Below are positions 1 to 61,680 of a DNA stretch of 64,000 nt, piece after piece; within the stretch, counting starts at the first letter, position 1; each line of letters starts with the position of its first letter. Origin of the DNA: Scyliorhinus canicula (Eukaryota); assembly GCF_902713615.1 (NCBI RefSeq), contig NC_052151.1, forward strand, positions 201,837,703 through 201,901,702, given 5' to 3'. The notes beneath the pieces are model-generated. The model did not search any database, was not told the DNA's origin, and saw only the letters and a list, made by a program, of their open reading frames with translations. The position numbers and the translations under genes were made by a program.

Positions 1-149
1 ATCCGTGTCTTCATTTCCAAAGTAATTGCTTGTCTTGCAGTCTTTGAATCGTAATTGTGATCCTCGGTTCAATATCTCTGAAATTCTGCCTCCAGTCACT
101 GAGCTTGTCTCGTTCCGCACTCACTGACTGTCTCCTCTTGTTCCCTCAG

Positions 150-470
150 TTCAGAATCAGGCTGCCCGTCTCCCTGTGAATGGATCCCTGGGTCAGTCAG
201 TCTCCCTGTCTCCGGTAATCCCACATCGATTGATGGACATCGAGGTTATCTGGAAACAATCTTCACGCAGTCTCAGAATAGCACGATACAGCAAGGAACA
301 TGTCAGTTACGTTGGGTCTGAGGATTACCAGAAACGGATCAAATTTCATCCTGGGAACTTCAGTCTGCAAATCAATGACTTACAGAGAGAGGATGCTGGG
401 AGTTATGAGGTGTTTTTAACAAGAGATTCAGGAGAGGAAACTACAGAGACCATTCAACTGGACGTGTACG
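150..470 (+). CDS. Gene A exon 2: CD2/SLAM-type N-terminal IgV domain (no canonical disulfide)
   Basis: Polypyrimidine/CAG acceptor at 147-149 and GTAAGT donor at 471; 321 nt, phase 1-1. QNQAARLPVNGSLGQSVSL..VIWK..RIKFHPGNFSLQINDLQREDAGSYEV..TIQLDVY has the Ig V-set DxGxY motif and lacks the B- and F-strand Cys, as in CD2/SLAM V domains. Confidence 0.92.
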
Positions 471-1315
471 GTAAGTGAGATTCTATTGGACATGCCTGGT
501 TTTACCCAGTTGTTGAAACCTGCCTTGTAACATTTTCAGGGCAGATTTCCTGGATATTTCAGTTTCCAGAACTCACTCATTGCAGAATCCATAATGGTGT
601 AACTGATCTTAGGTAAAAACATCTCAGAATGTAAGAGCAGAATAAACCCTCTCTGGTGAAGGCCATTCAACCCCTCTTATCACGTTAAATTATTCTCTGA
701 GGTCAATTCATCTACATCGACTCTGCCATTCCGCTCTATTCCGCATATCTCTCGTTGTTTTCCACACATCTATCCATCTCACTTTGAAATAAACTAATTG
801 GCTCTGAAGCCACAGCTGTCTGAGGTAGAGAATCCCAAACATTCACATTCGCCTGAGTGAAGTAATTTCTCTTCAACTCTACCCAAACTGGCTGAGCCAT
901 TATTCCGTGACCCATCCTCCACCCAGACAAGATTCCCCAATCAGCATGAAGCAGCCTCTCAGCATCTACCCCATTAACTACTCCAGAAATGTTATACTTT
1001 TCAATGAGAGCATCTTTTTCGTGGTCTGACCAGGATATCGAGACCAGAAATGTGCACAGGGCTCCAAATGTGGTCTGACCAGGGATATGTTATTTGGAGA
1101 GTATAACTGTGCACAACGATCCAAATGTACTTTAAGCAAGGTTTCAGAAAAGTTGAACTTAACTTCCATCATTTTTAATTCTATCGCCATAACAAATGCA
1201 TTCCAGTGTTATGTATGAAAATACCAGCCTTACTCACAGGCACAGAGACCTCTCAATCTCTACCTAAACAGACATTTGTGAGACCATCACAGGCTCTCTT
1301 TGTTTAATATTGAAA

Positions 1316-1606
1316 GTGGGTGGCACAGTCGCACATTGGTTAGCACTGTTGCTTCACAGCTCCAGGGTCCCAGGTTTGATTCCCGGCTTGGGTCACTGTC
1401 TGTGCGGAGTCTGCACATTCTCCCCGTGTGTGCGTGAGTTTCCTCCGGGTGCTCCGGTTTCCTCCCACAAGTCCCAAAAGACGTGCTGTTAGGTGAATTG
1501 GACATTCTGAATTCTCCCTCCGTGTATCCCGAACATGTGGCGACTAGGGGCTTCTCACAGTAACTTCATTGCAATGTTAATGTAAGCCTACTTGTGACAA
1601 AAAAAT
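1316..1606 (+). mobile_element. tRNA-derived SINE (HE1-like)
   Basis: A-box TGGTTAGCAC, B-box-like GGTTTGATTCC, and conserved core GGGTTTCCTCCGGGTGCTCCGGTTTCCTCCCAC. Confidence 0.85.
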
Positions 1607-2150: not shown

Positions 2151-2447
2151 AGCCTGTGACAGGAACAAAGATCAGCCAAAAGACAGAGAACTGCACCATG
2201 ACCCTGACCTGCTCAGTGAACACAGGCGACAACATCAGCTTCATATGGTGGAAGGGACAAGAAGCATTGATAAACTATAGCTCCCATCATCTCTCCGACA
2301 ATGGACAGGAATTACAGCTTCACTTCACAGAGGAGACCAACGACGCTGTGTACATGTGTGAGGCCAGGAACCCAGTCAGTGAGTGCACTGCACAATTCAA
2401 CACTGCACAATCCAACTTGAGTGGCATCTGCAATGCAAACAGAAATG
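2151..2447 (+). CDS. Gene A exon 3: SLAM-type IgC2 domain
   Basis: Acceptor tgtcag at 2145-2150, donor GTGAGT at 2448; 297 nt, phase 1-1. EPVTGTKIS..ENCTMTLTCSV..YMCEARNPVS..SGIC has the four-Cys C2 pattern (C-x-x-x-L-T-C, Y-x-C-x-A-x-N-P-V-S, terminal C) typical of the SLAM family. Confidence 0.92.
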
Positions 2448-2789: not shown

Positions 2790-2794
2790 ACAGT

Positions 2795-4713
2795 GTAAAG
2801 GGAGATTTACTCTGTATCTAACACCTGTGCTGTACCTGTCCTGGGAGTGTTTGATGAGGACAGTGTAGAGGGAGGTTTACTCTGTATCTAACCCCCTGCT
2901 GTACCTGTCCTGGGAGTGTTTGATGGGGACAGTGTAGAGGGAGATTTACTCTGTATCTAACCCCGTGCTGTACCTATCCTAGGAGTGTTTGATGGGCAGT
3001 GTAGAAGGAGCTGTACTCTGTATCTAACCCCGTGCTGTACCTGTCCTGGGAGTGTTTGATGGGGACAGTGTAGAGGAAGCTTTACTCTGTATCTAACCCC
3101 GTGCTGTACCTGTCCTGGGAGTGTTTGATGAGGACAGTGCAGAGGGGGCTTTACTCTGTATCTAACCCCATGCTGTACCTGTCCTGGGAGTGTTTGATGG
3201 GGACAGTGTAGAGGGAGCTTTACTCTGTATCTAACCCCGTGCTGGACCTGTCCTGCGAGTGTTTGATGGGGACAGTGTAGATGGAGCTTTACTCTGTATC
3301 TAACCCCGTGCTGTACCTGTCCTGCGAGTGTTTGATGGGGGCAGTGTAGAGGGAGCTTTACTCGATATCTAACCCCGTGCTGTACCTGTCCTGCGAGTGT
3401 TTGATGGGGACAGTGTAGAGGGAGATTTACTCTGTATCTAACCCCGTGCTGTACCTGTCCTGCGAGTGTTTGATGGGGACAGTGTAGAGGGAGCTTTACT
3501 CTGTATCTAACCCCGTGCTGTACCTGTCCTGGGTGTTTGATGAGGACAGTGCAGAGGGAGCTTTACTCTGTATCTAACCCCATGCTGTACCTGTCCTGGG
3601 AGTGTTTGATGGGGGCAGTGTAGAGGGAGCTTTACTCTGTATCTAACCCCGTGCTGTACCTGTCCTGCGAGTGTTTGATGGGGACAGTGTAGAGGGAGCT
3701 TTACTCTGTATCTAACCCTGTGCTGTACCTGTCCTGGGAGTGTTTGATGAGGACAGTGCAGAGGGAGCTTTACTCTGTATCTAACCCCATGCTGTACCTG
3801 TCCTGGGAGTGTTTGATGGGGGCAGTGTAGAGGGAGCTTTACTCTGTATCTAACCCCGTGCTGTACCTGTCCTGCGAGTGTTTGATGGGGACAGTGTAGA
3901 GGGAGCTTTACTCTGTATCTAACCCCGTGCTGTACCTGTCTTGGGAGTGTTTGATGGGGCAGTGCAGAGGGGGATTTACTCTGTATCTAACCCCGTGCTG
4001 TACCTGTCCTGCGAGTGTTTGATGGGGGCAGTGTAGAGGGAGCTTTACTCGATATCTAACCCCATGCTGTACCTGTCCTGGGAGTGTTTGATGGGGATAG
4101 TGTAGAGGGAGCTTTACTCAGTATCTAACCCGGTGCTGTACCTGCCCTGGGAGTGTTTGATGGGGACAGTGTAGAGGGAGCTTTACTCTGTATCTAACCC
4201 CGTGCTGTACCTGTCTTGGGAGTGTTTGATGGGGCAGTGCAGAGGGGGATTTACTCTGTATCTAACCCCGTGCTGTACCTGTCCTGCGAGTGTTTGATGG
4301 GGGCAGTGTAGAGGGAGCTTTACTCGATATCTAACCCCATGCTGTACCTGTCCCGGGAGTGTTTGATGGGGATAGTGTAGAGGGAGCTTTACTCAGTATC
4401 TAACCCCGTGCTGTACCTGTCCTCGGACTGTTTGATGGAGTGAATGTAGAGGGAGCTTTACTCTGTATCTAAAGCCGTGCTGTACCTGTCCTGGGAGTGT
4501 TTGATGGGAACAGTGTAGAGGGAGCTTTACTCCATATCTAACCCCGTGCTGTACCTGTCCTGGGACTGTTTGATGGCGACAGTGTAGAGGGAGCTTTACT
4601 CTGTATCTAACCCCGTGCTGTCCCTGTCCTGGGAGTGTTTGATAGGGACAGTGTAGAGGGAGCTTTACTCTGTTTCTAACCCCGTGCTGTACCTGTCCTG
4701 GGAGTGTTTGATG
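2795..4713 (+). repeat. 69-bp tandem satellite, about 28 units, gene A intron 3
   Basis: Unit GGGGACAGTGTAGAGGGAGCTTTACTCTGTATCTAACCCCGTGCTGTACCTGTCCTGGGAGTGTTTGAT; period measured from 3061 to 3130. Confidence 0.97.
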
Positions 4714-4752
4714 GTGTTATATTTCTTAGTTGTCACACATGGAAAAGTAATG

Positions 4753-14779: not shown

Positions 14780-16142
14780 ATCATGAATTATTGAGTCATT
14801 TAGTGCAGAAAAATTGCAGGATTGAGCTAACAGTTTAAGGTCAGTGAAAAAGCTGTTTAAAGTTTCCTCTTTCCCATGCATCCTTTTTTTTTAAAGATGT
14901 AGCGCTCAAATATTTCATTTGTCTGTACTTTACAGTGGCTATCAAATTTCTCAAGGATGGTCTCATACATAGTTTTATCTTGACCTTCTGAGTAGTTAAA
15001 TGAGTTGTAGATCTCTATCCCATGCAGACCAACCATAGTCAATAAAGAGCAATTTTACGAGCATCTGCCGCACTTTTTAAATCAGACGCTTCTAAATACA
15101 GTTGGAATTGTTGTCTAAACAGCCACCACTTAACATTAAGGTTACCGATTGTCCTAAGGTGACGAGGAGCTTGTGGTCTGTCCATCGTGCCGGCATCATC
15201 AGGTTTTGTTTTCCGAAGGCGATGCTTCTGTTGCCGAATAGCTGTCTATTCTTCTCTCTGTTCTCGCTAAATTTGACTAGGTAGATTCAGTAGCCACTCT
15301 GGTACCATGTTATATTACTGGGTTTCAGTAATATATGTCGTTACTAACTGTAGATGATGTTGAAGAACACTTGAGTCTTCAAAATAAACTGAAAGAATTT
15401 ATTGAGTAACGATAAAACTACTAAATGAGTTTGACACTCCACTGAACTAACTCAAGCAATAAATATGGCTAAATAACTGTACAAACTGTATCTAAGCTAC
15501 ACATGGTGTCTAGGCTGTGATCTTACTCTGCTGCACTGCTGCTATCTGATAACTTCTCCATGGAAAGAGAGCTGTAGCTTCTGGGGGCTCAGTTATGTAG
15601 GGGCTATTTTAATGCCCTCGAGTGGTTCCAATGTGCTGGTCTGGGAATGCCAACATGCCAGGTGTCAGCGAGGGTACCACCCTACCCAGAGTCCAACTAC
15701 CCAGGGGTTTGTACTGAGCCTGGGCGACCCTCCCCTCCCCCAGGTACCATTACACCTGGCCCATGTTATAAAAAAACGTTCCTGGTTAATTCCCGGGCTC
15801 CAGGAGAAGACAGCGCAGAAATATTTAAATGAGCCTGAAGGCTTACTTAAATATGCTAATATTAATCCAGATCTTGACATCTCATGAGAATCTTACGGGC
15901 CATTTAGTGTATCGGGAATCTCGTGAGTGGCCCCTCGTGAGATTAAACAACCTCATCATGCCACCAAGTCGGGTGCAACAAGTCCATTAATTCACACCCA
16001 TAGTCAGGAACAGAGGCTGCTGTGGGGAGAGGGGTTACTGAATAACAGAGTGAGGGAGCTGGATGGAGAATGGAATGTGTGCTGCTGTCTCTCTGTTTGA
16101 AGATCACATTGTCATTGGAAAATCTATCTTTCCCTTTTGCAG

Positions 16143-16268
16143 AGCCAGTAACATTCCAGTATGAAACTTTGCTCTATATACTGTTGGTCTTCGTCCTCAT
16201 ACTCTCCTGCCTACTGATTATCTTGTGCAAACGAGCTTCAAGAAAGAAAAGGGACTTGACGTTAGGAG
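16143..16268 (+). CDS. Gene A exon 4: stalk, transmembrane and juxtamembrane
   Basis: Acceptor tttcccttttgcag ends 16142. (E)PVTFQYETLLYILLVFVLILSCLLIILCKRASRKKRDLTLG is a ~21-aa uncharged hydrophobic run followed by a basic stop-transfer. It ends at AG|GCAAGT (GC donor) in phase 1, matching both neighbouring exons. Confidence 0.82.
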
Positions 16269-18309: not shown

Positions 18310-18428
18310 ATTCGAATAAGCCGGGAAAAGAGCAGGAATGCGCCTGCGAGCCACAGACCATTTATGCTTTGGTGCAGCCAATGAAGAAACATCAAGAGAC
18401 ACGCCCTCCCCCAGAAGGAAATGAGATG
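18310..18428 (+). CDS. Gene A exon 5: cytoplasmic, ITSM 1 (TIYALV)
   Basis: Acceptor ctattcttccctttcaaag ends 18309, donor ATG|GTAAAG at 18429; phase 1-0. (D)SNKPGKEQECACEPQTIYALVQPMKKHQETRPPPEGNEM. Confidence 0.82.
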
Positions 18429-18879
18429 GTAAAGGGAAATGGGACACACATTTCTCCCCCAGAGACTCTACATTCCCTGAATCACTGATTCCCTCTCAAT
18501 CTCCTGATAATCTTCTCATCCGTTCCTGAACTGCTGTACTGAGTCCTTCAAACACGCACAGTAAGATCCCAGCATTCAATGAAGGCACCAGCTGCCTCAT
18601 TTTTCAAAGTGACCTCCACCAGTGAGAATGGCGATGGCAGAGGTTGCGTGGAAATACCAAAACTCTCTGAGGCGGACACACATCACCCCGATCAGGATGG
18701 CCATTGACAGTTCATTCACTGACACTGGGCCAAACATCATCCTAAACAGCATTGAGGGATGTTCAATGCCATTATCTTCACTGAAATCCCCGCCCCCCCC
18801 CCCCCCCTCACCCCTCACCCTGGGGGCTACCATTGACCAGAAACTTGGCTAGCCATATTAATACTGTGGCTACAAGAGC

Positions 18880-19379: not shown

Positions 19380-19475
19380 GTAGCGACGGAGACTGAGACA
19401 CCATTCACAGTCTACGATACGGTCAAGAACCCTGGAGTCCCAGTTTCTCAACTGCCTGATCAACAATGTGATTAA
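19380..19475 (+). CDS. Gene A exon 6: cytoplasmic, ITSM 2 (TVYDTV) and stop
   Basis: Acceptor ttttctacttgttctgtag ends 19379; phase 0, matching exon 5. VATETETPFTVYDTVKNPGVPVSQLPDQQCD*, TAA at 19473-19475. Confidence 0.82.
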   Translation, partial: VATETETPFTVYDTVKNPGVPVSQLPDQQCD

Positions 19476-19827: not shown

Positions 19828-21135
19828 CAGGGCAGCACGGTGGCGCAGTGGGTCAGCCCTGCTTCCTCACGGCGCCAAAGTCCCAGGTTCGATCCCGGCT
19901 CTGGGTCACTGTCTGTGTGGAGTTTGCACATTCACCCCGTGTTTGCGTGGGTTTCGCCCCCACAACCCAAAGATGTGCAGGGTAGCTGGATTGGGCACGC
20001 TAAATTGCCCCTTAATTGGAAAAAAAATGAATTGGGTACTCTAAATTTGAAGAAAAAAAGGAGAGAGAAAGACAGAGAATACAGATATCTTTACATTTAT
20101 TTTAATGAGCAATAAAGAATGTAAGTAGACAAGGAATAGGAATAGGAGTAAACCACATGGCCTCCTCAAGCCTGCTGCACCATTCCATATCACATGGCTG
20201 ATTGTCTACCTCAAATCCAGCCAGTCTCTTGATTCTCTGAGAGACCAAGAATCACTTTGTCTCAGCCTTAAATATGTTCAAGGGTGGAGTGTCCATAGCT
20301 CCCTGGGGTCAAGGAACCCAAAGATTCATAACCCTCTGAGTAAGGAAGTTTCCTTTCATCACAGACCTAAATCTCCTTTGAGACTGTTTCAAGATTAAGA
20401 TAAATAGTTTTTTGAAGAATAAAGGGATTAAGGGTTATTGTGTTCAGGCGGGAAAGTGGAGCTGAGTCCACAAAAGATCAGCCTTGATCTCATTGAATGG
20501 AGGAGCAGACTCGTAGGACCAAATGGCCTACTCCTGCTCCTAGTTCTTGTTCTTATGTCTCACCATTCTATATTCCCCAGCCAGGGAGAAACAGTAAGAA
20601 GTCTTACAACACCAGGTTAAAGTCCAACAGGTTTGTTTCAAACATTAGTACGGCAGTACGGTAGCATTGTGGATAGCACAATCGCTTCACAGCTCCAGGG
20701 TCCCAGGTTCGATTCCGGCTTGGGTCACTATCTGTGCGGAGTCTGCACATCCTCCCCGTGTTTGCGTGGGTTTCCTCCGGGTGCTCCGGTTTCCTCCCAC
20801 AGTGCTCACCCCAGTCCAACGCCGGCATCTCCAAATCATGGGAGAAACAGCTTCACAGTGTCAATCCCCTTCAGGATCTCAGTGAATGGTATTGTCAATG
20901 GGCTAGTAATCCAGAGGGCCAAGCTAATGCTCTGGGGAACCCGGTTCAAATCCCACCACAGGGACCGCTGAATTTCAATTCAAATAATAAAAATCTAAAT
21001 ATTAAAACTCTAACAACGATCACAAAGTCATTGTCGATTGTCACAAAAAACCATCTGCAGTCCTTCCCTGGTCTGGCCTACTTGTGACTCCAGATCCACA
21101 GGAATGTAGTTGACTCTTAAATGCCCTCTGAAATG
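19828..21135 (+). mobile_element. SINE cluster (19828-20060, 20655-20812, 20870-21135)
   Basis: Two HE1-like copies and a second tRNA-SINE family (GGTTCAAATCCCACC); the latter also occurs at about 22010-22280 (-) and 57610-57770 (+). Confidence 0.75.
20111..20116 (+). terminator. Candidate poly(A) signal of gene A
   Basis: First AATAAA I found downstream of the stop codon (about 640 nt); position only, no transcript evidence. Confidence 0.35.
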
Positions 21136-48556: not shown

Positions 48557-48603
48557 TCATCCATCCAGCTCAGAGAGAGGTCCCTCTGTCCCTCCACGCA
48601 GCT
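48557..48603 (-). CDS. Putative alternative/ancestral last exon of gene B (QLRGGTEGPLSELDG*)
   Basis: Acceptor gactccctcacag is conserved in the paralogous copy (exon start 30270). It is in phase 1 with a repaired exon-4 donor, but that donor is disrupted in this sequence. Confidence 0.4.
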
Positions 48604-50065
48604 CTGTGAGGGAGTCAGGAATCACAATGTCAGCACAGAGGAGAGGGAGAGAACAGGAGAGGGAGAGGGAAGGGGAGGGGAGGGTGAGGAGGGAGAGGGA
48701 GGGATAGGGGAAGGAAGAGAGGGGAGGGAGAGGAGATGAAAGGGGAGGGAGTGCAGAGGGAGGAGATGATGGGAGGGAGAGGGTGCGGGAGGGAAGTGAA
48801 GGGAGATTTGAGAGGAGGGAAAGTTGAGGGAAAGGGAGGTGAAGGAGAGAATGGGGAAAGACGTTTTGAAGGAACAGGAGGAGAGCAAGGGAGAGGTGAG
48901 GAAAGTGACAGAGACAGGAGGGTGAGGGAGATGGGAAGGGGAGGGAATGGAAGAGAATGTGGAGTGGAGGGTCAATGGAGGAGGGCGCAGGAGGGGGGGA
49001 TGGATTGCAGGAAGTGAAGAAGATTTTAAATGAAGGGAGGTGGGGGAGGGGGATATGAGTCTACGGAAGGAGTCACCAACCTTTCCGAGTTTGCATCCAC
49101 GTTCTCCGACCCCGCAACTGGGTGCCTGAGAGAGGGCAGAGAGAAGGAGGGAGATCAGTGAGCTGACACAGTGCTGGATCCTAATCTCTATCGGTCTGTT
49201 TCTTCTCTTCATTGTCCTCTCTCTCCGTCACTCTACCTTCAATCTCCCTCTCACCCTACTTCTCATTCATTCTCTCTCCCATTCCATCTCACCACGCCAC
49301 ACTCATTCATTATCTCTCTCTCTTACTACCCCCACCGCTCGTCCTCTTTGCTGTGTCTCTCAACCCTGCCTCTCTCAACCACTTCTCTCTCACATTCTTT
49401 TCTCTCTGTCTGTTTCTCACTCTCTCTCCTTCCCCATGTCTGCGTGGGTTTCCTCGGGGTGCTCCAGTTTCCTGCCAAAGCCCAAAGGTGTGAAGAACAG
49501 TTGGATTGACCATCCTAAATTGCCCCTTAGTGTCCAAAGATATGGAGGTTGGGTAGATTGGTTATCTTGTGTCTCAGGACGTGCAGTTTTGGTGGGTTGC
49601 GGGGTTGTTCGATAGTTCGGGGGAGGGGGCCGAGATAGGGTCGGTACAGGGTTGTTGAGTCGAATGGCCTCATTCTGCACTGTAGGGGTTCTGTAGATTC
49701 TCTCTGTCACTTTTCCCCTCAATCACAGCCTCTCTTTTGTGGTCTTTCTCTCTCTTTCTGTCTCCTGCCCACTCATTCTTTCTCTCATTCTCTCCTCTCT
49801 CACTCAATGCATCGCTCAAATTGTCTCCCACCCTGGCTCTCGCAATCTCTCTCTCTTTCTTTAACTCTTTCAATTATTGGCCCTCTTTCTCTTCCAATCT
49901 CCCTCCCTCTCTTTTCTCCAACTCTACCTCCCTTTACCTCTCTCTCTGTCTCGCTCTGTCTCATTCTCTATTTGTCTCTCTTTCTCCATCACTCTGTCTC
50001 CATCATAATATCTAGGAATATTGAACATTAACACTCAGTACAATTCAGAAATGATGTCTGAATAC

Positions 50066-50175
50066 TCAACGTTTGCTGATCACTTGGACGATGACAATGA
50101 CCGAGAGCAGAATAGTCAGGATGGTGACAGAAATGATCAACTTCACATAACACGGAGAGCAACAGGATTGTTCAG
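50066..50175 (-). CDS. Gene B exon 4: Cys-rich stalk, TM and 3-aa tail, stop
   Basis: Strong acceptor tttctttccccttccccctccccag in phase 1. (A)EQSCCSPCYVKLIISVTILTILLSVIVIVQVISKR*; TGA at 50068-50066. Not in the ORF track; read by hand. Confidence 0.8.
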
Positions 50176-50270
50176 CTGGGGAGGGGGAAGGGGAAAGAAA
50201 AATAATTTTATAGAGACATATTTCAGAGCTCAGTCACAAAACCTTTCATCAATTCTTGACTCATCAAAGA

Positions 50271-55810: not shown

Positions 55811-55844
55811 AGATAATAATCATAGGGTTCGTAATTCTCCCTCT

Positions 55845-56780
55845 ACACTGCCCCATCAAACACTCCCAGGACAGGTACTGCATGGGGTTAGATACAGAAT
55901 AAATCTCCCTCTACGCTGTCCCCATCAAATATTCCCAGGGCAGGCACAGCACGGGGTTAGATACAGAGTAAAGCTCACTCTACACTGTCCCCATCAAACA
56001 CTCCCAGGACAGGTACAGCACAGGGTTAGATACAGAGTAAAGCTCCCTCTACACTGTCCCCATCAAACACTCCCAGGACAGGTACAGCAAGGGGTTAGAT
56101 ACAGAGTAAAGCTCCCTCTACACTGTACCCATCAAACACTCCCAGGACAGGTACAGCACGGGGTTAGATACAGAGTAAAGCTCCCTCGACACTGTCCCCA
56201 TCAAACACTCGCAGGACAGGTACAGCACGGGGTTAGATACAGAGTAAAGCTCCCTCTACACTGTCCCCATCAAACATTCCCAGGGCAGGCACAGCACGGG
56301 GTTAGATACAGAGTAAAGCTCCCTCTACACTGTCCCTATCAAACACTCGCAGGACAGGTACAGCACGGGGTTAGATACAGAGTAAAGCTCCCTCTACACT
56401 GTCCCCATCAAACACTCCCAGGGCAGGCACAGCACGGGGTTAGATACAGAGTAAAGCTCCCAATCCACTGTCTCCATCAAACACTCCCAGGGCAGGCACA
56501 GCACGGGGTTAGATACAGAGTAAAGCTCCCTCTACACTGTCCCCATCAAACACTCCCAGGACAGGGACAGCATGGGGTTAGATACAGAGTAAAGCTCCCT
56601 CTACACTGTCCCCATCAAACACTCCCAGGACAGGTACAGCACGGGGTTAGATACAGAGTAAAGCTCCCTCGGCACTGTCCCCATCAAACACTCGCAGGAC
56701 AGGTACAGCACGGGGTTAGATACAGAGTAAAGCTCCCTCGGCACTGTCCCCATCAAACACTCGCAGGACAGGTACAGCAT
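55845..56780 (-). repeat. 69-bp tandem satellite, about 13 units, gene B intron 3
   Basis: Reverse complement of the 2795-4713 unit; starts about 50 nt after the C2 donor. Confidence 0.97.
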
Positions 56781-56832: not shown

Positions 56833-57132
56833 CAGGTTTGATTCCTTTACAGACGCCACTCACGTTGAATTGTGCAGTGTTGAATTGTGCAGTGCCCTCA
56901 CTGACTGGGTTCCTGGCCTCACACACGTACACAGCGTCGTTGGTCTCCTCTGTGAAGTGAAGCTGTAATTCCTGTCCATTGTCGGAGAGATGATGGGAGC
57001 TGCCGTTTCTCAATGCTTCTTGTCCCCTCCACCATCTGAAGCTGATGTTGTCGCCTGTGTTCACTGAGCAGGTCAGGGTCAGGTTACAATTCTCGATGAG
57101 TTTATAGCTGATCTTTGTTCCTGTCACAGGCT
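56833..57132 (-). CDS. Gene B exon 3: SLAM-type IgC2 domain
   Basis: 300 nt, phase 1-1, acceptor tggcag, donor GTGAGT. EPVTGTKISYKLIENCNLTLTCSV..YVCEARNPVSEG..SGVCKGIKP is about 80% identical to the gene A C2. Confidence 0.92.
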
Positions 57133-58264: not shown

Positions 58265-60611
58265 CCCCACATCCTCTCCCCGGCTTGGAGAGTCAGCCAA
58301 GGGTGTTGTTGCAATCTCACACCTCCACCACGTGGCTAAGAGCTAGTCTGGTTCAGTCAGACAGAGTAACCCCACTTAAGTTAGTAGAGAGTCGAACTCA
58401 CAGAGAACTGTGCTAACTGTGCTATTAGTTCAATAAATCAGATTGAACCAACTTCAAGGTCTGGAGTATCTTTCTGATCTAAGCTGCATCCTGTTGCAGC
58501 CAGTGTTGGACCAGTGTACCTAATCCGACAGCCTCTCCATTGTTGCCACATTCAGCTGGTAGTGTGGCGACCAGAATTGAACACTATACTCCAAGTGCAA
58601 CCTAACTAAGGTTCTATACAGCTGCAACATGACTTGCCAATGTTTATACTCAATGCCTCGGCCAATGAAGGCAATCATGCTGTATACCTTCTTGGCTAAC
58701 TTCTCCACCTGTGTTGCCTCTTTCAGTGAACTGTGGACCTTTGCATCCAGATCCCTCTGACTGCCAATTTTCTTAAGGGTTGTGACGGAGAGATTTCCAG
58801 GTATCTGCTGCCCTTGTCCTTCTAGACGGTAGTGGTCGAGGGTTTGGAAGGTGTTGCCTGAGGAACCTTGGGGAGTTGCTGCAGTGCATCTTGTAGATGG
58901 TACACACGGCTGCTGCTGTGCGTCGGTGGGAGGGAGAGAGCAATGTTGAGAATGGTGTACCAATCAAGTGGACTGCTTTGTCCTGGATGGTGTCGAGCTT
59001 CTTGAGTGCTGTTGGAGCTGCACACATCCAGGCAAGTGGAGAGTTTTCCATCACACTCCTGACTTGTGCCTTGTAGATGGTGGACAGGTTTTAGGAGGTC
59101 AGGAGGTGAGTTACTCACTGCAGGATTCTCAGCCTCTGACCTGCTCTTGGGGCCACAGTATTTATATGGCTGGGTTCAGTTCAGCTTCTGATCAATGGTA
59201 ACCTCCCCAGGAAGCTGACTGTGGGGGATTCAGCAATGGTAATGCCATTGAATGTCAAGGGTCGATGATTCGATCCTCTCCTGTAGGAGATGGTCATGGC
59301 CTGGCACTTAAGGTGAAAATGTTACTTCCCACTTTGCAGCCTAAGCCTGGATATTGTCCAGCGTTCTTGCTGCGTTTGGACATGGACTGCTTCACTATCT
59401 GAGGAGTCGCAAATGGTGCTGAACATTGTGCAGTCATCGGCAAATAGGGAGTCACAGAATCCTCCAGCTCAGAAAAGGCCCTTCAGCCCATCAACTCTGA
59501 GCTGGTGAAAAACAACCACCTAACTATTCTAGTCCCATTTTCCAGCACTTTTTCCTCACATCCCGTCTAAACCTCCTGCCCTTGAACTTAAATCTATGCC
59601 CCCTGGTCATTGAGCTCTCCACCAAGGGGAAATGTTTCTTCCTGTCTATCTATGCCCCTCATAATTGTATACATCTCAATCATGTCCCCCTCTCAGTCTC
59701 CTCTGCTCCAAGGAAAACAACCCCAGTCTGTCCAACCTCTCTTCATAACTAACACTCTCCAGCCCCGGCAATATGCTGGTAAACCTCCTCTGCTCCCTTT
59801 CCAGGGCGATCACATCCCTCCCATAATGTGGATTCCAGAACTGCGCACATCTGACCTGATGTTGGAAGGAGGGTCACTGTTGAAGCAGCTGGAAATGGTT
59901 GGTCCGAGGACACTACCCTGAGGAACTCCTGTAGTGATGTCTTGAACTGCCCCCCTGAAAAGGCCCAGCAAGTGACTGAGTTCAAGGGCAATTAGGGATG
60001 GGCAATAAAGGCTGGCCGTGTCAGTGACGTCCACAGGAAAGAATAAAATATCCCCCAACTCCTGGAACATTTTGGCAGCAGTCCTCTCTGTTCTCAGTAA
60101 CAATGAGCAGCATCTCCAAATGTCTGGACCAGGACACGGTGGTTGGAGCAACAACTCGTTTATTTACATGGGGCAGGGGAAGGATTATACACAATGTCTA
60201 AAATTCTTTTGTGTGTTTGACAGGTTAGATGTCGAGAGGCTGTTCCCCCACTTGGACAGGGTAGAATCAGAGGGGTCACAGTATCTCAGGGTTACGGGGT
60301 CAGCCCATTCCAGACTGAGATGAAGAGAACGTTCTTCAGTCAGAGGGTCTGCAGATTTGGAATTCTCTCTCTCTCCCTGGGAGAGCTCGGGTTTCTCACT
60401 CGATGAGGGTATTTGAGACTGAGATGGGCAATGTTTGTACAGAAGTGGGATTGAGGGATTTTGCGATTGGGTGGGATGATAGAGTTGATGTACCTGATCA
60501 GACAGGATCTTATTGAACTTTGGAACAGGCTCGAGGGGCTGAATGGCCTCCTCTCAATCCTATCTTTCAGTGATCAGTAAAGCTCAGTCTATCCAATAGA
60601 ATCTCACTTAC

Positions 60612-60932
60612 CGTACACGTCCAGTTGAATGGTCTCTGGAGTTTCCACTCCTGAAACTTTTGTTAAAACCACCTCATAACTCCCAGCATCCTCTCTCTGT
60701 AAGTCACTGATTTGCAGACTGAAGTTCCCAGGATGAAATTTGATCCGTTTCTGGTAATCCTCAGACCCAAAGTAACTGACATGTTTCTTGCTGTATCGTG
60801 CTATTCTGAGTCTGCGTGAAGATCGTTTCCAGATAACCTCGACATCCATCAATCCATGTGGGATTACTGGAGACAGGGAGATTGACTGACCCAGGGATCC
60901 ATTCACAGGGAGACGAGCAGCCTGATTCTGAA
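60612..60932 (-). CDS. Gene B exon 2: CD2/SLAM-type IgV domain
   Basis: 321 nt, phase 1-1, with the same splice sites as gene A exon 2; 16 nt differences from it (hand count). Confidence 0.92.
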
Positions 60933-61625
60933 CTGAGGGAACAAGAGGAGACAGTCAGTGAGTGCGGAACGAGACAAGCTCAGTGACTGGAGGCAGAATT
61001 TCAATTCATAGCCCCATACCATTCAGGAAGATGCCATTCAACCCATCGTGCACATGCTAGCTCTGTGACAGAGCAAGCTAATTCATCCCACTCACCCCTC
61101 CTTCCCCAACTCCCTGTAAGTTTCCCCCCTTCCAGTGTTTCTCCCATTCCCCCTTTCTGGAAGTTCCTATTGAGTCTGCTCCCACCACCCTTTCAGACAG
61201 AACCTTCCAGATCACAACAACTCTCTGTGTAAAAACATTTCTCCTCATCCTCATCTCCCCCTCTGCTTCTTTTACTGATTCTCTTCAATCTGTGTCCCTC
61301 TCGTTCCCCACCCTCCTGTCACTGGAAACACTTCCTCCTTCTTTACTCCATCTGAACACTTCCTGATTTTGACCGTCTCGATTCAATCCCCCCCCCCCCC
61401 TTAACTTTCTCTGCTCGAAGAACAACCCCAGCTTCTCCAGTCTCTCCGCACCGACTGAAGTCCCTCATTCCCGGAACCATTCCGGTAAATCTTCCTCTGT
61501 ACCTCTCCCCGAGGGCTTGGCAGTGCTCAAGGAAGGATTTGGACATCAACGCAAATGAGGAAGCAAAGAAAGTTCAGAGAGAGAGAGAGAGAGAGAGAGA
61601 ACCGGAAACACTGAATCAAACTCAC

Positions 61626-61680
61626 AGACTGATAGGGAGAGAGCCAGCGAACAACAGATGAACAATTCCCCAAACTCCAT
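61626..61680 (-). CDS. Gene B exon 1: signal peptide
   Basis: gaagATGG start at 61680 encodes MEFGELFICCSLALSLSV plus T, followed by a GTGAGT donor. The 55-nt phase-1 exon joins the V exon in frame (T+TT=Phe). Confidence 0.82.

What the first reader, a model, noticed from the sequence alone, without database searches (positions are those of the whole stretch)
150..470. V domains differ almost only by replacement changes, with a charge flip on the predicted binding face
Hand alignment of the two 321-nt V exons gives 16 differences, 13 non-synonymous and 3 synonymous, while the 70-nt upstream intron flank (80-149 vs 60933-61002) is identical. A-to-B changes include Q>R, S>R, E>K (C-C'-C'' region) and D>V, E>V, T>P (F-G region), so B is more basic and A more acidic. 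Established: CD2-family binding uses the GFCC'C'' face, and CD2-CD58 binding relies on charge complementarity. Inference: diversifying selection, either toward heterophilic A-B binding or to escape a pathogen decoy ligand. The counts are too small to be significant on their own.
Basis: partly seen in the sequence, partly recalled or inferred. Interest (0 to 1): 0.72.

Follow-up and report, generated by a model that had tools for sequence, protein, structure and literature searches.

The report
Catshark SLAM receptor pair, V-domain differences
Two neighbouring catshark immune-receptor genes share a nearly identical outer domain that is kept alike by DNA copying between them; their 13 amino-acid differences lie largely on the likely binding surface, but their number does not prove selection.

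Summary
The two 321-nt V exons (150-470 on +, 60932-60612 on -) differ at 16 bases, 13 replacement and 3 silent, and 91 flanking intron bases are identical.

The inference of diversifying selection is not shown. A 13:3 split is what random mutation gives: dN/dS is 1.29, Fisher p = 1, 95% range 0.35-7. Only strong purifying selection is excluded.

What is there is a receptor pair in Scyliorhinus canicula. Gene A is a SLAM-like receptor with two ITSM motifs. Gene B has a cysteine-rich stalk, a conserved Lys/His membrane span and a short tail without an ITSM.

The same A/B couple exists in S. torazame, Mustelus, Cetorhinus and Carcharodon. Stalk, membrane span and tail group by type, while V+C2 group by species. 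This means the ectodomain exons are repeatedly homogenised, most likely by gene conversion.

Some evidence favours the binding-face idea:
- Five of the 13 changes (40, 54, 92, 95, 98) fall in the 14-residue interface of a predicted head-to-head V:V dimer (P about 0.014, or 0.05 after weighting for site variability).
- B is more basic than A in all five species.

The reading is therefore partly supported. The pair is a new member of a known kind, paired receptors under concerted evolution.

The parts
150..470 (+). Gene A V-set exon (codons 152-469, phase 1). It belongs to the S. canicula 'SLAM-like isoform X2' protein P0007.
   Evidence: Translation and Pfam V-set hit at 1.5e-9. 100% tblastn match to P0007. 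Splice joint 470/2151 seen in contigs of 4 runs.
60612..60932 (-). Gene B V-set exon (codons 60930-60613). It belongs to the S. canicula 'Ly-9-like' protein P0152.
   Evidence: It is 88% identical to A at the protein level, with 16 nt differences.
79..149 (+). Intron flank upstream of V exon A, identical to 60933-61003 of gene B. The 5' limit of A/B homology is at 79.
471..490 (+). Intron flank downstream of V exon A, identical to 60592-60611 of gene B. Homology ends at 490.
2151..2447 (+). Gene A C2-set exon. Divergence from B is mosaic: 5' edge 9/48, centre 8/213, 3' edge 10/36.
56833..57132 (-). Gene B C2-set exon, 3 nt longer than A's. It shares with A a 15-nt tandem duplication (TAQFN twice) that both S. 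torazame genes lack.
16141..16268 (+). Gene A stalk and transmembrane exon, followed by a GC donor.
18310..18431 (+). Gene A cytoplasmic exon with the first ITSM (TIYALV). The 3' end was not mapped exactly.
19380..19475 (+). Gene A last coding exon with the second ITSM (TVYDTV). The 5' end is approximate.
61625..61680 (-). Gene B leader exon (starts MEFGELF...). This B-type signal peptide is conserved in other sharks. The 3' end is approximate.
50069..50176 (-). Gene B exon for the cysteine-rich stalk and the transmembrane span, with Lys at the outer edge. It splices on to two small tail exons.
48560..49123 (-). Gene B's two short cytoplasmic exons (49123-49082 and 48604-48560). There is no ITSM.

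Best explanation
A and B are a linked, convergently oriented receptor pair of the CD2/SLAM family in the small-spotted catshark. A carries two ITSM switch motifs. B carries a cysteine-rich stalk, a strongly conserved membrane span with Lys and His, and a short tail without an ITSM. The pair predates the split of Carcharhiniformes and Lamniformes. In every species examined, the V and C2 exons of the two genes are more alike within the species than between species. This means the ectodomain is repeatedly overwritten between the genes, most likely by gene conversion between inverted copies. In S. canicula the tract runs from 71 nt upstream of the V exon to about 35 nt before the end of the C2 exon. 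The 16 V-exon differences are what has accumulated, or been kept, since the last homogenisation of that block. They sit at the family's most changeable positions, mainly the CC', C'' and FG elements. In the predicted SLAM-type V:V contact these elements touch each other. Their 13:3 replacement-to-silent ratio equals the mutational expectation. It therefore shows an absence of strong constraint on these surface loops, possibly with some adaptive change, but it does not prove diversifying selection. Shown here: the gene structures, the counts, the tree conflict and the mosaic divergence. Inferred: gene conversion as the mechanism, a shared ligand or self-binding through this face, and adaptor coupling of B.
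For: Gene models: P0007 is A with TIYALV and TVYDTV, and P0152 is B. A/B couples occur in S. torazame (P0151/P0154), Mustelus asterias (P0153/P0157), Cetorhinus (P0155/P0159 and others) and Carcharodon (P0161/P0160). The ectodomain tree groups by species: Mustelus 100/99, S. torazame 100/99, Carcharodon 100/100 and S. canicula 81/71. Forcing B into one clade is rejected at p-AU 1e-22, and forcing Scan_B with Stor_B at 2e-10. The stalk/TM/tail tree groups by type: the B clade has 100/100 support, and forcing Scan_A with Scan_B is rejected at p 7e-48. A 15-nt duplication in C2 is shared by both S. canicula genes and absent from both S. torazame genes. Divergence is mosaic: V block 3.9%, C2 centre 3.8%, intron 10.6%, C2 edges 19-28%. 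The V block differs from the C2 block at p = 0.0002. The changed sites are the family's most variable (p = 0.001), and 5 of 13 lie in the predicted interface. The V-to-C2 splice is seen in four RNA-like runs. Orders were checked.
Against: No nucleotide sequence of the other sharks could be fetched, so concerted evolution rests on protein trees. Independent exon shuffling or duplication in each lineage would give the same trees. The S. canicula A+B node has only 81/71 support. The absence of any difference in 91 flanking bases (P = 0.018) and the one-sided test of N against S plus flank (odds ratio 3.0, p = 0.063) lean towards faster-than-neutral change in the exon, which this reading treats as unproven rather than absent. 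The ligand, the V:V contact and any adaptor for B are predictions only.
Confidence: 0.7

Rival explanations
1. This is the reader's hypothesis: diversifying, or type-differentiating, positive selection on the ligand-binding face. After each homogenisation, selection drives A and B apart at the contact loops. The result would be either a charge-complementary A:B (heterophilic) contact or a B that differs in affinity for a shared or pathogen-derived ligand.
For: Omega is 1.29, although the fold's core sites are plainly constrained. All 16 differences are in the exon and none in the 91 flank bases (P = 0.018). N against S plus flank gives an odds ratio of 3.0 with one-sided p = 0.063. Five of 13 sites are in the predicted interface (P = 0.0135). 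In the model, residue 40 (Ser in A, Arg in B) touches partner residues 95-98 (Glu95 in A, Val95 in B), and residue 54 touches 92-94. B's V domain is more basic than A's in 5 of 5 species, and a Glu in the FG loop is lost in B in three species: E95V, E94G and E96V. Further V forms appear in RNA contigs, where 21 of the 24 listed variant positions are replacements.
Against: No test reaches significance once site variability is allowed for (P = 0.05). Fisher p is 1.0 for N against S. The pooled count of 27 N to 5 S gives P = 0.23. Within-species A/B differences in the other four species are not enriched in the interface (6 of 37 against 4.9 expected). Against the larger intron sample, dN is below the neutral rate. 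The charge and FG-loop patterns were noticed after looking at the data. The complex prediction may reflect memory of solved SLAM-family dimers.
Confidence: 0.22
2. Relaxed constraint because one copy is decaying. On this view B, or A, is a redundant or non-functional duplicate drifting neutrally.
For: Omega is about 1 over both ectodomain exons. No B-specific letters were seen in the one same-species RNA-like run that was laid (X1).
Against: Both genes have complete open reading frames with all exons and plausible splice sites. Both types are conserved, with type-specific leader, stalk, membrane span and tail, in five species of two orders. The Cys-to-Gly difference in C2 is derived in A and is not a loss in B, because the other sharks have Gly, Asp or Arg at that position. 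A B-like V form is present in the RNA-like contigs of organism B.
Confidence: 0.05
3. Assembly artefact, in which the two arms are mis-assembled haplotypes of one gene.
For: The arms are inverted, lie at the two ends of the window and are 96% identical in the V block.
Against: The arms continue into unrelated leader, membrane and tail exons. Each of those has its own orthologues in other sharks. NCBI annotates the arms as two separate genes on one 226-Mb record.
Confidence: 0.02

Closest known systems
Mammalian SLAM-family receptors (SLAMF1, 3, 5, 6, 7 with ITSMs; short-tailed SLAMF8/9; GPI-anchored CD48/SLAMF2)
   Same: The V domain lacks cysteines and is followed by a C2 domain, a single membrane span and TxYxx[VI] switch motifs in A. 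The short-tailed B has no ITSM, which recalls SLAMF8/9 and CD48. The family features are described in PMC4718992. Sequence and fold matches are CD48 at 7e-14, CD84 at 8.5e-13 and 2B4 at TM 0.82.
   Different: Identity to mammalian members is only 21-30%, and no one-to-one orthology is shown. B has a membrane span with conserved Lys and His and a cysteine-rich stalk, not a GPI signal. In the mammalian family, members with near-identical ectodomains and different tails are not the rule.
CEACAM1 / CEACAM3-type paired receptors kept alike by gene conversion (Kammerer and Zimmermann 2010, PMC2832619)
   Same: An inhibitory or switch-motif receptor and a differently signalling partner have ligand-binding Ig-V domains that stay closely related within each species. 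That paper attributes this to gene conversion and reciprocal recombination, with rapid, species-specific change of the binding domain.
   Different: The family is different (CEA, not CD2/SLAM) and the hosts are mammals. There the partner carries an ITAM-like motif and a decoy function against bacteria is documented. Here B's signalling mode and any pathogen ligand are unknown.
2B4-CD48 and CD2-CD58 heterophilic V:V contacts
   Same: In the predicted A:B dimer, the CC' loop (40-42) of one chain lies against the FG loop (92-98) of the other, and vice versa. PMC6914781 describes this geometry for 2B4-CD48.
   Different: The contact is only a prediction for A:B. A:A and B:B were not tested, so homophilic and heterophilic binding cannot be told apart.

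Membership tests
CD2/SLAM family of Ig receptors | N-terminal V-set Ig domain without the canonical B-F disulfide | tested here: met
   Pfam V-set hits at 1.5e-9 and 5.9e-10, plus a Receptor_2B4 hit at 3e-4. Neither V domain contains a cysteine, and Val87 stands where the F-strand Cys would be.
CD2/SLAM family of Ig receptors | Membrane-proximal C2-set domain with conserved cysteines, followed by a single membrane span | tested here: met
   C2 exons with the cysteines of NC...LTC...YxC. Ig, I-set and Ig_2 families are precomputed for P0007 and P0152. Membrane exons are mapped.
CD2/SLAM family of Ig receptors | Closest solved relatives are family members | tested here: met
   The profile search finds CD48, CD84, CD2 and NTB-A at the top. 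Foldseek finds 2B4 at TM 0.82 and rmsd 1.7, then CD48, CD84 and NTB-A.
CD2/SLAM family of Ig receptors | Cytoplasmic ITSM (TxYxxV/I), the SAP/EAT-2 docking site of SLAM receptors proper | tested here: met
   A has TIYALV and TVYDTV. B has none, so B qualifies only as a short-tailed member of the family. Binding of SAP or EAT-2 is not testable here.
CD2/SLAM family of Ig receptors | Trans binding through the V domain's GFCC'C'' face | tested here: inconclusive
   Complex prediction for A-V with B-V scored ipSAE 0.61 against a best control of 0.00. That mark was reached by 51 of 78 solved complexes and 2 of 108 mismatched pairs. The runs agree in at least 97% of contacts, and the partner's pLDDT is at least 83. 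The pass may come from memory of solved family dimers.
Paired immune receptors under concerted evolution | Linked genes with near-identical ectodomains but unrelated membrane and cytoplasmic parts | tested here: met
   V is 88% identical and C2 about 80% identical. There is no homology in leader, stalk/TM or tail, nor beyond nt 79 or nt 2447 apart from the shared satellite.
Paired immune receptors under concerted evolution | Ectodomains group by species while tails group by type | tested here: met
   (p-AU 1e-22, 2e-10, 5e-5 and 7e-48).
Paired immune receptors under concerted evolution | The short-tailed partner couples to a signalling adaptor through a charged membrane residue | not testable with these tools
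   B-type spans keep a Lys at the outer edge and, in the other four species, a His near the inner edge where S. canicula B has Gln. No adaptor binding can be shown here.
Genes under positive (diversifying) selection | dN/dS significantly above 1, for the gene or for a class of sites | tested here: not met
   Omega is 1.29 for V (p = 1.0; range 0.35-7), 0.89 for C2 and 1.05 for both. Site models could not be run because no coding DNA from other species was available.

The most novel reading that the evidence does not exclude
A and B are each other's counter-receptors: a heterophilic, charge-complementary pair like 2B4-CD48. On this reading their binding faces are kept in register by gene conversion, while selection repeatedly re-installs a more basic CC'/C'' region and a less acidic FG loop in B. 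This system would have been maintained for well over 100 million years in galeomorph sharks, and the V exon may in addition be highly polymorphic.
Probability: 0.15. Interest if true: 0.7.

Novelty: new member of a known kind. Interest (0 to 1): 0.45.

Why it matters
Paired receptors whose binding domains evolve in concert are a recurring answer to pathogen pressure in mammals; KIR, LILR and CEACAM are examples. A SLAM-family pair of this kind, conserved across two orders of sharks, would push that design back to early jawed vertebrates and into a family usually thought of as self-ligands. It also gives a concrete system of five natural A/B replicates. With them one could test whether differences between paired receptors at the contact loops are selected or merely tolerated. 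For the scan, the lesson is that a replacement-rich difference list between two recent copies is the null expectation and is not by itself a sign of selection.

Tried and rejected
- **DNA of the orthologous genes.** I looked up P0154, P0164 and P0157 with the look-up of encoding contigs. All three returned 'no DNA: the sample's file is too large', so no cross-species codon analysis was possible.
- **Short V-domain fragments.** A search of the protein collection found nothing.
- **Loss of a cysteine in B's C2 domain as a sign of decay.** I rejected this. The cysteine is peculiar to A, and the other sharks have Gly, Asp or Arg there.
- **A/B match at 20387-20558 against 51223-51050 as a shared exon.** I rejected this. 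It has no open frame and is a dispersed repeat.
- **Homology in the V-C2 intron and upstream of position 79.** I looked with word size 7 and found none.
- **Published interface residues for CD84.** The paper is not held.
- **Literature on shark or cartilaginous-fish SLAM genes.** Searches gave nothing relevant.
- **Enrichment of A/B differences in the predicted interface in the other four species.** None was found: 6 of 37 against 4.9 expected.
- **The read-laying output.** The variant table is truncated ('41 more not shown') and the organisms are coded. The extra V forms could therefore not be fully reconstructed or assigned to an allele, a paralogue or a sister species.

Full report
**1. The observation**

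- The second V exon lies on the minus strand at 60932-60612. In the ungapped register (A position i against window position 61082-i), 150-470 holds exactly 16 mismatches.
- The exon is read in phase 1 (codons 152-469) and encodes 106 residues of a V-set Ig domain without any cysteine.
- Thirteen differences change the residue: V17I, R26G, I30V, Q36R, S40R, E49K, V54F, N75S, F88V, R91K, D92V, E95V and T98P, written A to B. Three are silent.
- The 71 nt upstream (79-149) and 20 nt downstream (471-490) are identical. Beyond 79 and 490 the two arms cannot be aligned even with short words.
- Net charge is -2 for A and +3 for B.

**2. Whether the pattern exceeds chance**

- The exon has 245.7 replacement and 72.3 silent sites, so random change gives 3.4 replacements per silent change, against 4.3 observed. 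Nei-Gojobori omega is 1.29 with Fisher p = 1.0.
- The 95% range for omega is 0.35-7. Only strong purifying selection is excluded: omega of 0.2 or less has P = 0.001, and 0.3 has P = 0.012.
- The C2 exon behaves alike, with 21 replacement and 6 silent changes and omega 0.89. Both exons together give 1.05.
- Two features lean the other way. All 16 differences lie in the exon and none in the 91 flank bases (P = 0.018; the two identical end runs give P = 0.014). Replacement sites against silent sites plus flanks give an odds ratio of 3.0, with one-sided p = 0.063.
- Against this, the 378 aligned intron bases upstream of the C2 exon are 10.6% diverged, which is more than dN. The two neutral yardsticks disagree because the locus is a mosaic, as section 4 shows.

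**3. What the genes are**

- An exhaustive profile-free search with the V domain returned P0007, which matches the window at 100%.
- P0007 is annotated 'signaling lymphocytic activation molecule-like isoform X2 [Scyliorhinus canicula]'. P0152, annotated 'T-lymphocyte surface antigen Ly-9-like' from the same 226-Mb record, is gene B.
- Gene A was mapped back to the window as V 150-470, C2 2151-2447, stalk/TM 16141-16268 (GC donor), then cytoplasmic exons at about 18310 and 19380. Its tail carries two ITSMs, TIYALV and TVYDTV. Its leader exon lies before the window.
- Gene B lies wholly inside the window on the minus strand: leader 61680-about 61625, V 60932-60612, C2 57132-56833, stalk/TM 50176-50069 and two small tail exons down to 48560. 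It has a cysteine-rich stalk, a Lys at the outer edge of the span and about 30 cytoplasmic residues without an ITSM.
- The two genes are convergent. The V-to-C2 splice of the A-type (470/2151, GT..AG) is present in contigs of four runs.
- Family membership is supported in three ways:
  - Pfam gives V-set and Receptor_2B4.
  - A 64-sequence profile finds CD48 (7e-14), CD84 (8.5e-13), CD2 and NTB-A among solved structures.
  - An AlphaFold model (pLDDT 88) is closest to 2B4 (TM 0.82, rmsd 1.7), CD48, CD84 and NTB-A.
- The family's general architecture and its short-tailed members without ITSMs are described in PMC4718992.

**4.

- The same couple is annotated in four other sharks:

| Species | A-type | B-type |
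|---|---|---|
| S. torazame | P0151 | P0154 |
| Mustelus asterias | P0153 | P0157 |
| Cetorhinus maximus | P0155 | P0159, P0162, P0014, P0164 |
| Carcharodon carcharias | P0161 | P0160 |

- These species belong to two orders, Carcharhiniformes and Lamniformes.
- In the alignment, leader, stalk, membrane span and tail are type-specific across species.
- A tree of stalk/TM/tail puts all B-types in one clade (100/100). It rejects S. canicula A+B as a clade at p-AU 7e-48.
- A tree of V+C2 does the opposite. A and B pair within Mustelus (100/99), S. torazame (100/99), Carcharodon (100/100) and S. canicula (81/71).
- On that ectodomain tree, a B clade is rejected at 1e-22, Scan_B+Stor_B at 2e-10 and Scan_A+Stor_A at 5e-5.
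- Both S. canicula genes carry a 15-nt tandem duplication in C2 (TAQFN twice) that neither S. torazame gene has.
- Within the window, divergence is mosaic:

| Segment | Differences | Divergence |
|---|---|---|
| V block | 16/412 | 3.9% |
| Intron before C2 | 40/378 | 10.6% |
| C2 5' edge | 9/48 | 19% |
| C2 centre | 8/213 | 3.8% |
| C2 3' edge | 10/36 | 28% |

- The V block differs from the C2 block at p = 0.0002.
- At the C2 3' edge the sequence becomes type-specific.
- The simplest reading is repeated gene conversion between the inverted copies. The tract is bounded 71 nt upstream of the V exon and inside the 3' part of the C2 exon.
- The closest described analogue is the CEACAM1/CEACAM3-type couple, whose N domains are kept alike by gene conversion (PMC2832619).

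**5. Where the 13 changes sit**

- The model's strands are A' 9-11, B 17-19, C 30-36, C' 41-47, C'' 50-53, D 63-66, E 71-74, F 83-91 and G 96-105.
- Two changes are on the B/E side (17, 75) and one is in the BC loop (26). Ten are on C, CC', C'C'', C'', F, FG or G.
- V17I, I30V and R91K are conservative.
- A complex prediction for A-V with B-V supports binding without showing it:
  - The score was ipSAE 0.61 against a best control of 0.00.
  - That mark was reached by 51 of 78 solved complexes and 2 of 108 mismatched pairs.
  - The runs agree in at least 97% of contacts, and the partner's pLDDT is at least 83.
  - The tool warns that a pass may come from memory of solved family dimers.
- The predicted interface is symmetric: residues 35, 40-42, 54-55, 90 and 92-98 on both chains. 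The CC' loop lies against the partner's FG loop, which is the geometry described for 2B4-CD48 (PMC6914781).
- Five changed sites (40, 54, 92, 95, 98) are among these 14 residues (hypergeometric P = 0.0135).
- The changed sites are also the most variable in the family alignment (Mann-Whitney p = 0.001). After weighting by that variability, P is 0.05.
- In the other four species the A/B differences are not enriched there (6 of 37 against 4.9 expected).
- Two patterns seen after the fact deserve a proper test. B's V domain is more basic than A's in all five species (+5, +2, +1, +1, +1). B has lost a Glu of the FG loop in three species: E95V, E94G and E96V.

**6. Extra variation seen in sequencing runs**

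- One run of the same organism label (X1) holds a contig identical to A over 190-405. It also holds a second contig of similar depth with 15 differences. That second form shares some B states (G26, F54, S75) but not others.
- Three runs of a second, coded organism hold two forms. These differ at many sites in 150-310 but collapse into one contig over 313-469 plus C2.
- Of the 24 V-exon variant positions listed, 21 are replacements (P = 0.17 against the mutational expectation). The union with the A/B differences is 27 replacement to 5 silent (omega about 1.6, P = 0.23).
- The table is truncated and the organisms are coded. I therefore cannot say whether these forms are alleles, further paralogues or a sister species.
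- The trend matches A against B: replacement-rich but never significant.

**7. Verdict**

- The placement on the likely binding face is supported at a modest level.
- The claim of diversifying selection is not shown and cannot be decided with two sequences.
- The best-supported account is a SLAM-family receptor pair, one member with ITSMs and one short-tailed, whose ectodomain exons are homogenised by gene conversion. Its remaining differences lie in the labile contact loops.
- A pseudogene reading and an assembly artefact are both unlikely. Each gene is complete, and each type is conserved in five species.
- I found no description of such a pair in sharks in the papers searched. Paired receptors under concerted evolution are nevertheless a known kind.

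Noticed in passing
window 190-405 (and C2 sites 2244, 2253, 2276, 2384), run X1: A second expressed V/C2 form appears in a run with the same organism label. It has 15 differences from A in 216 nt, nearly all replacements, and mixes A-like, B-like and ancestral states. It could be a very divergent allele or an unannotated third gene.
   Followed up: partly
window 150-310 against 313-469 plus 2150-2447, runs X14, X15 and X19 (organism B): Two forms differ at about 20 positions in the 5' half of the V exon. They collapse into a single contig, with summed depth, over the 3' half and the C2 exon. This points to a sharply bounded hypervariable or converted segment.
   Followed up: partly
window 2388-2417 and 56892-56863: A 15-nt tandem duplication (TAQFN twice) sits in the G-strand region of the C2 domain of both S. 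canicula genes. It is absent from all other sharks aligned.
   Followed up: yes
window 50069-50176 (-) and B-type proteins P0154, P0157, P0159 and P0160: The B-type membrane span (K-L-x-I-S-V-...-V-I-V-I-x-H-V-I-S-K/R) is more conserved between orders of sharks than the ectodomain is. This suggests a specific partner in the membrane.
   Followed up: partly
window 16268/16269: The intron after gene A's membrane exon starts with GC (AG|GCAAGT), so it is a GC-AG intron.
   Followed up: partly
window 1331-1600: A dispersed repeat in the V-C2 intron of gene A has summed contig depth of 1e5 to 2e6 in all four runs, with many rearranged joints. It is a highly abundant, transcribed SINE-like element.
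   Followed up: no
Cetorhinus maximus 433-kb contig (P0155, P0159, P0162, P0014, P0164): The basking shark has one A-type and at least four B-type genes on one contig, so the B side of the pair has expanded there.
   Followed up: no
window 2790-4714 and 55831-56779: A 69-bp satellite array follows the C2 exon in both genes at about 92% identity, although the sequence immediately after the exon is already diverged.
   Followed up: no
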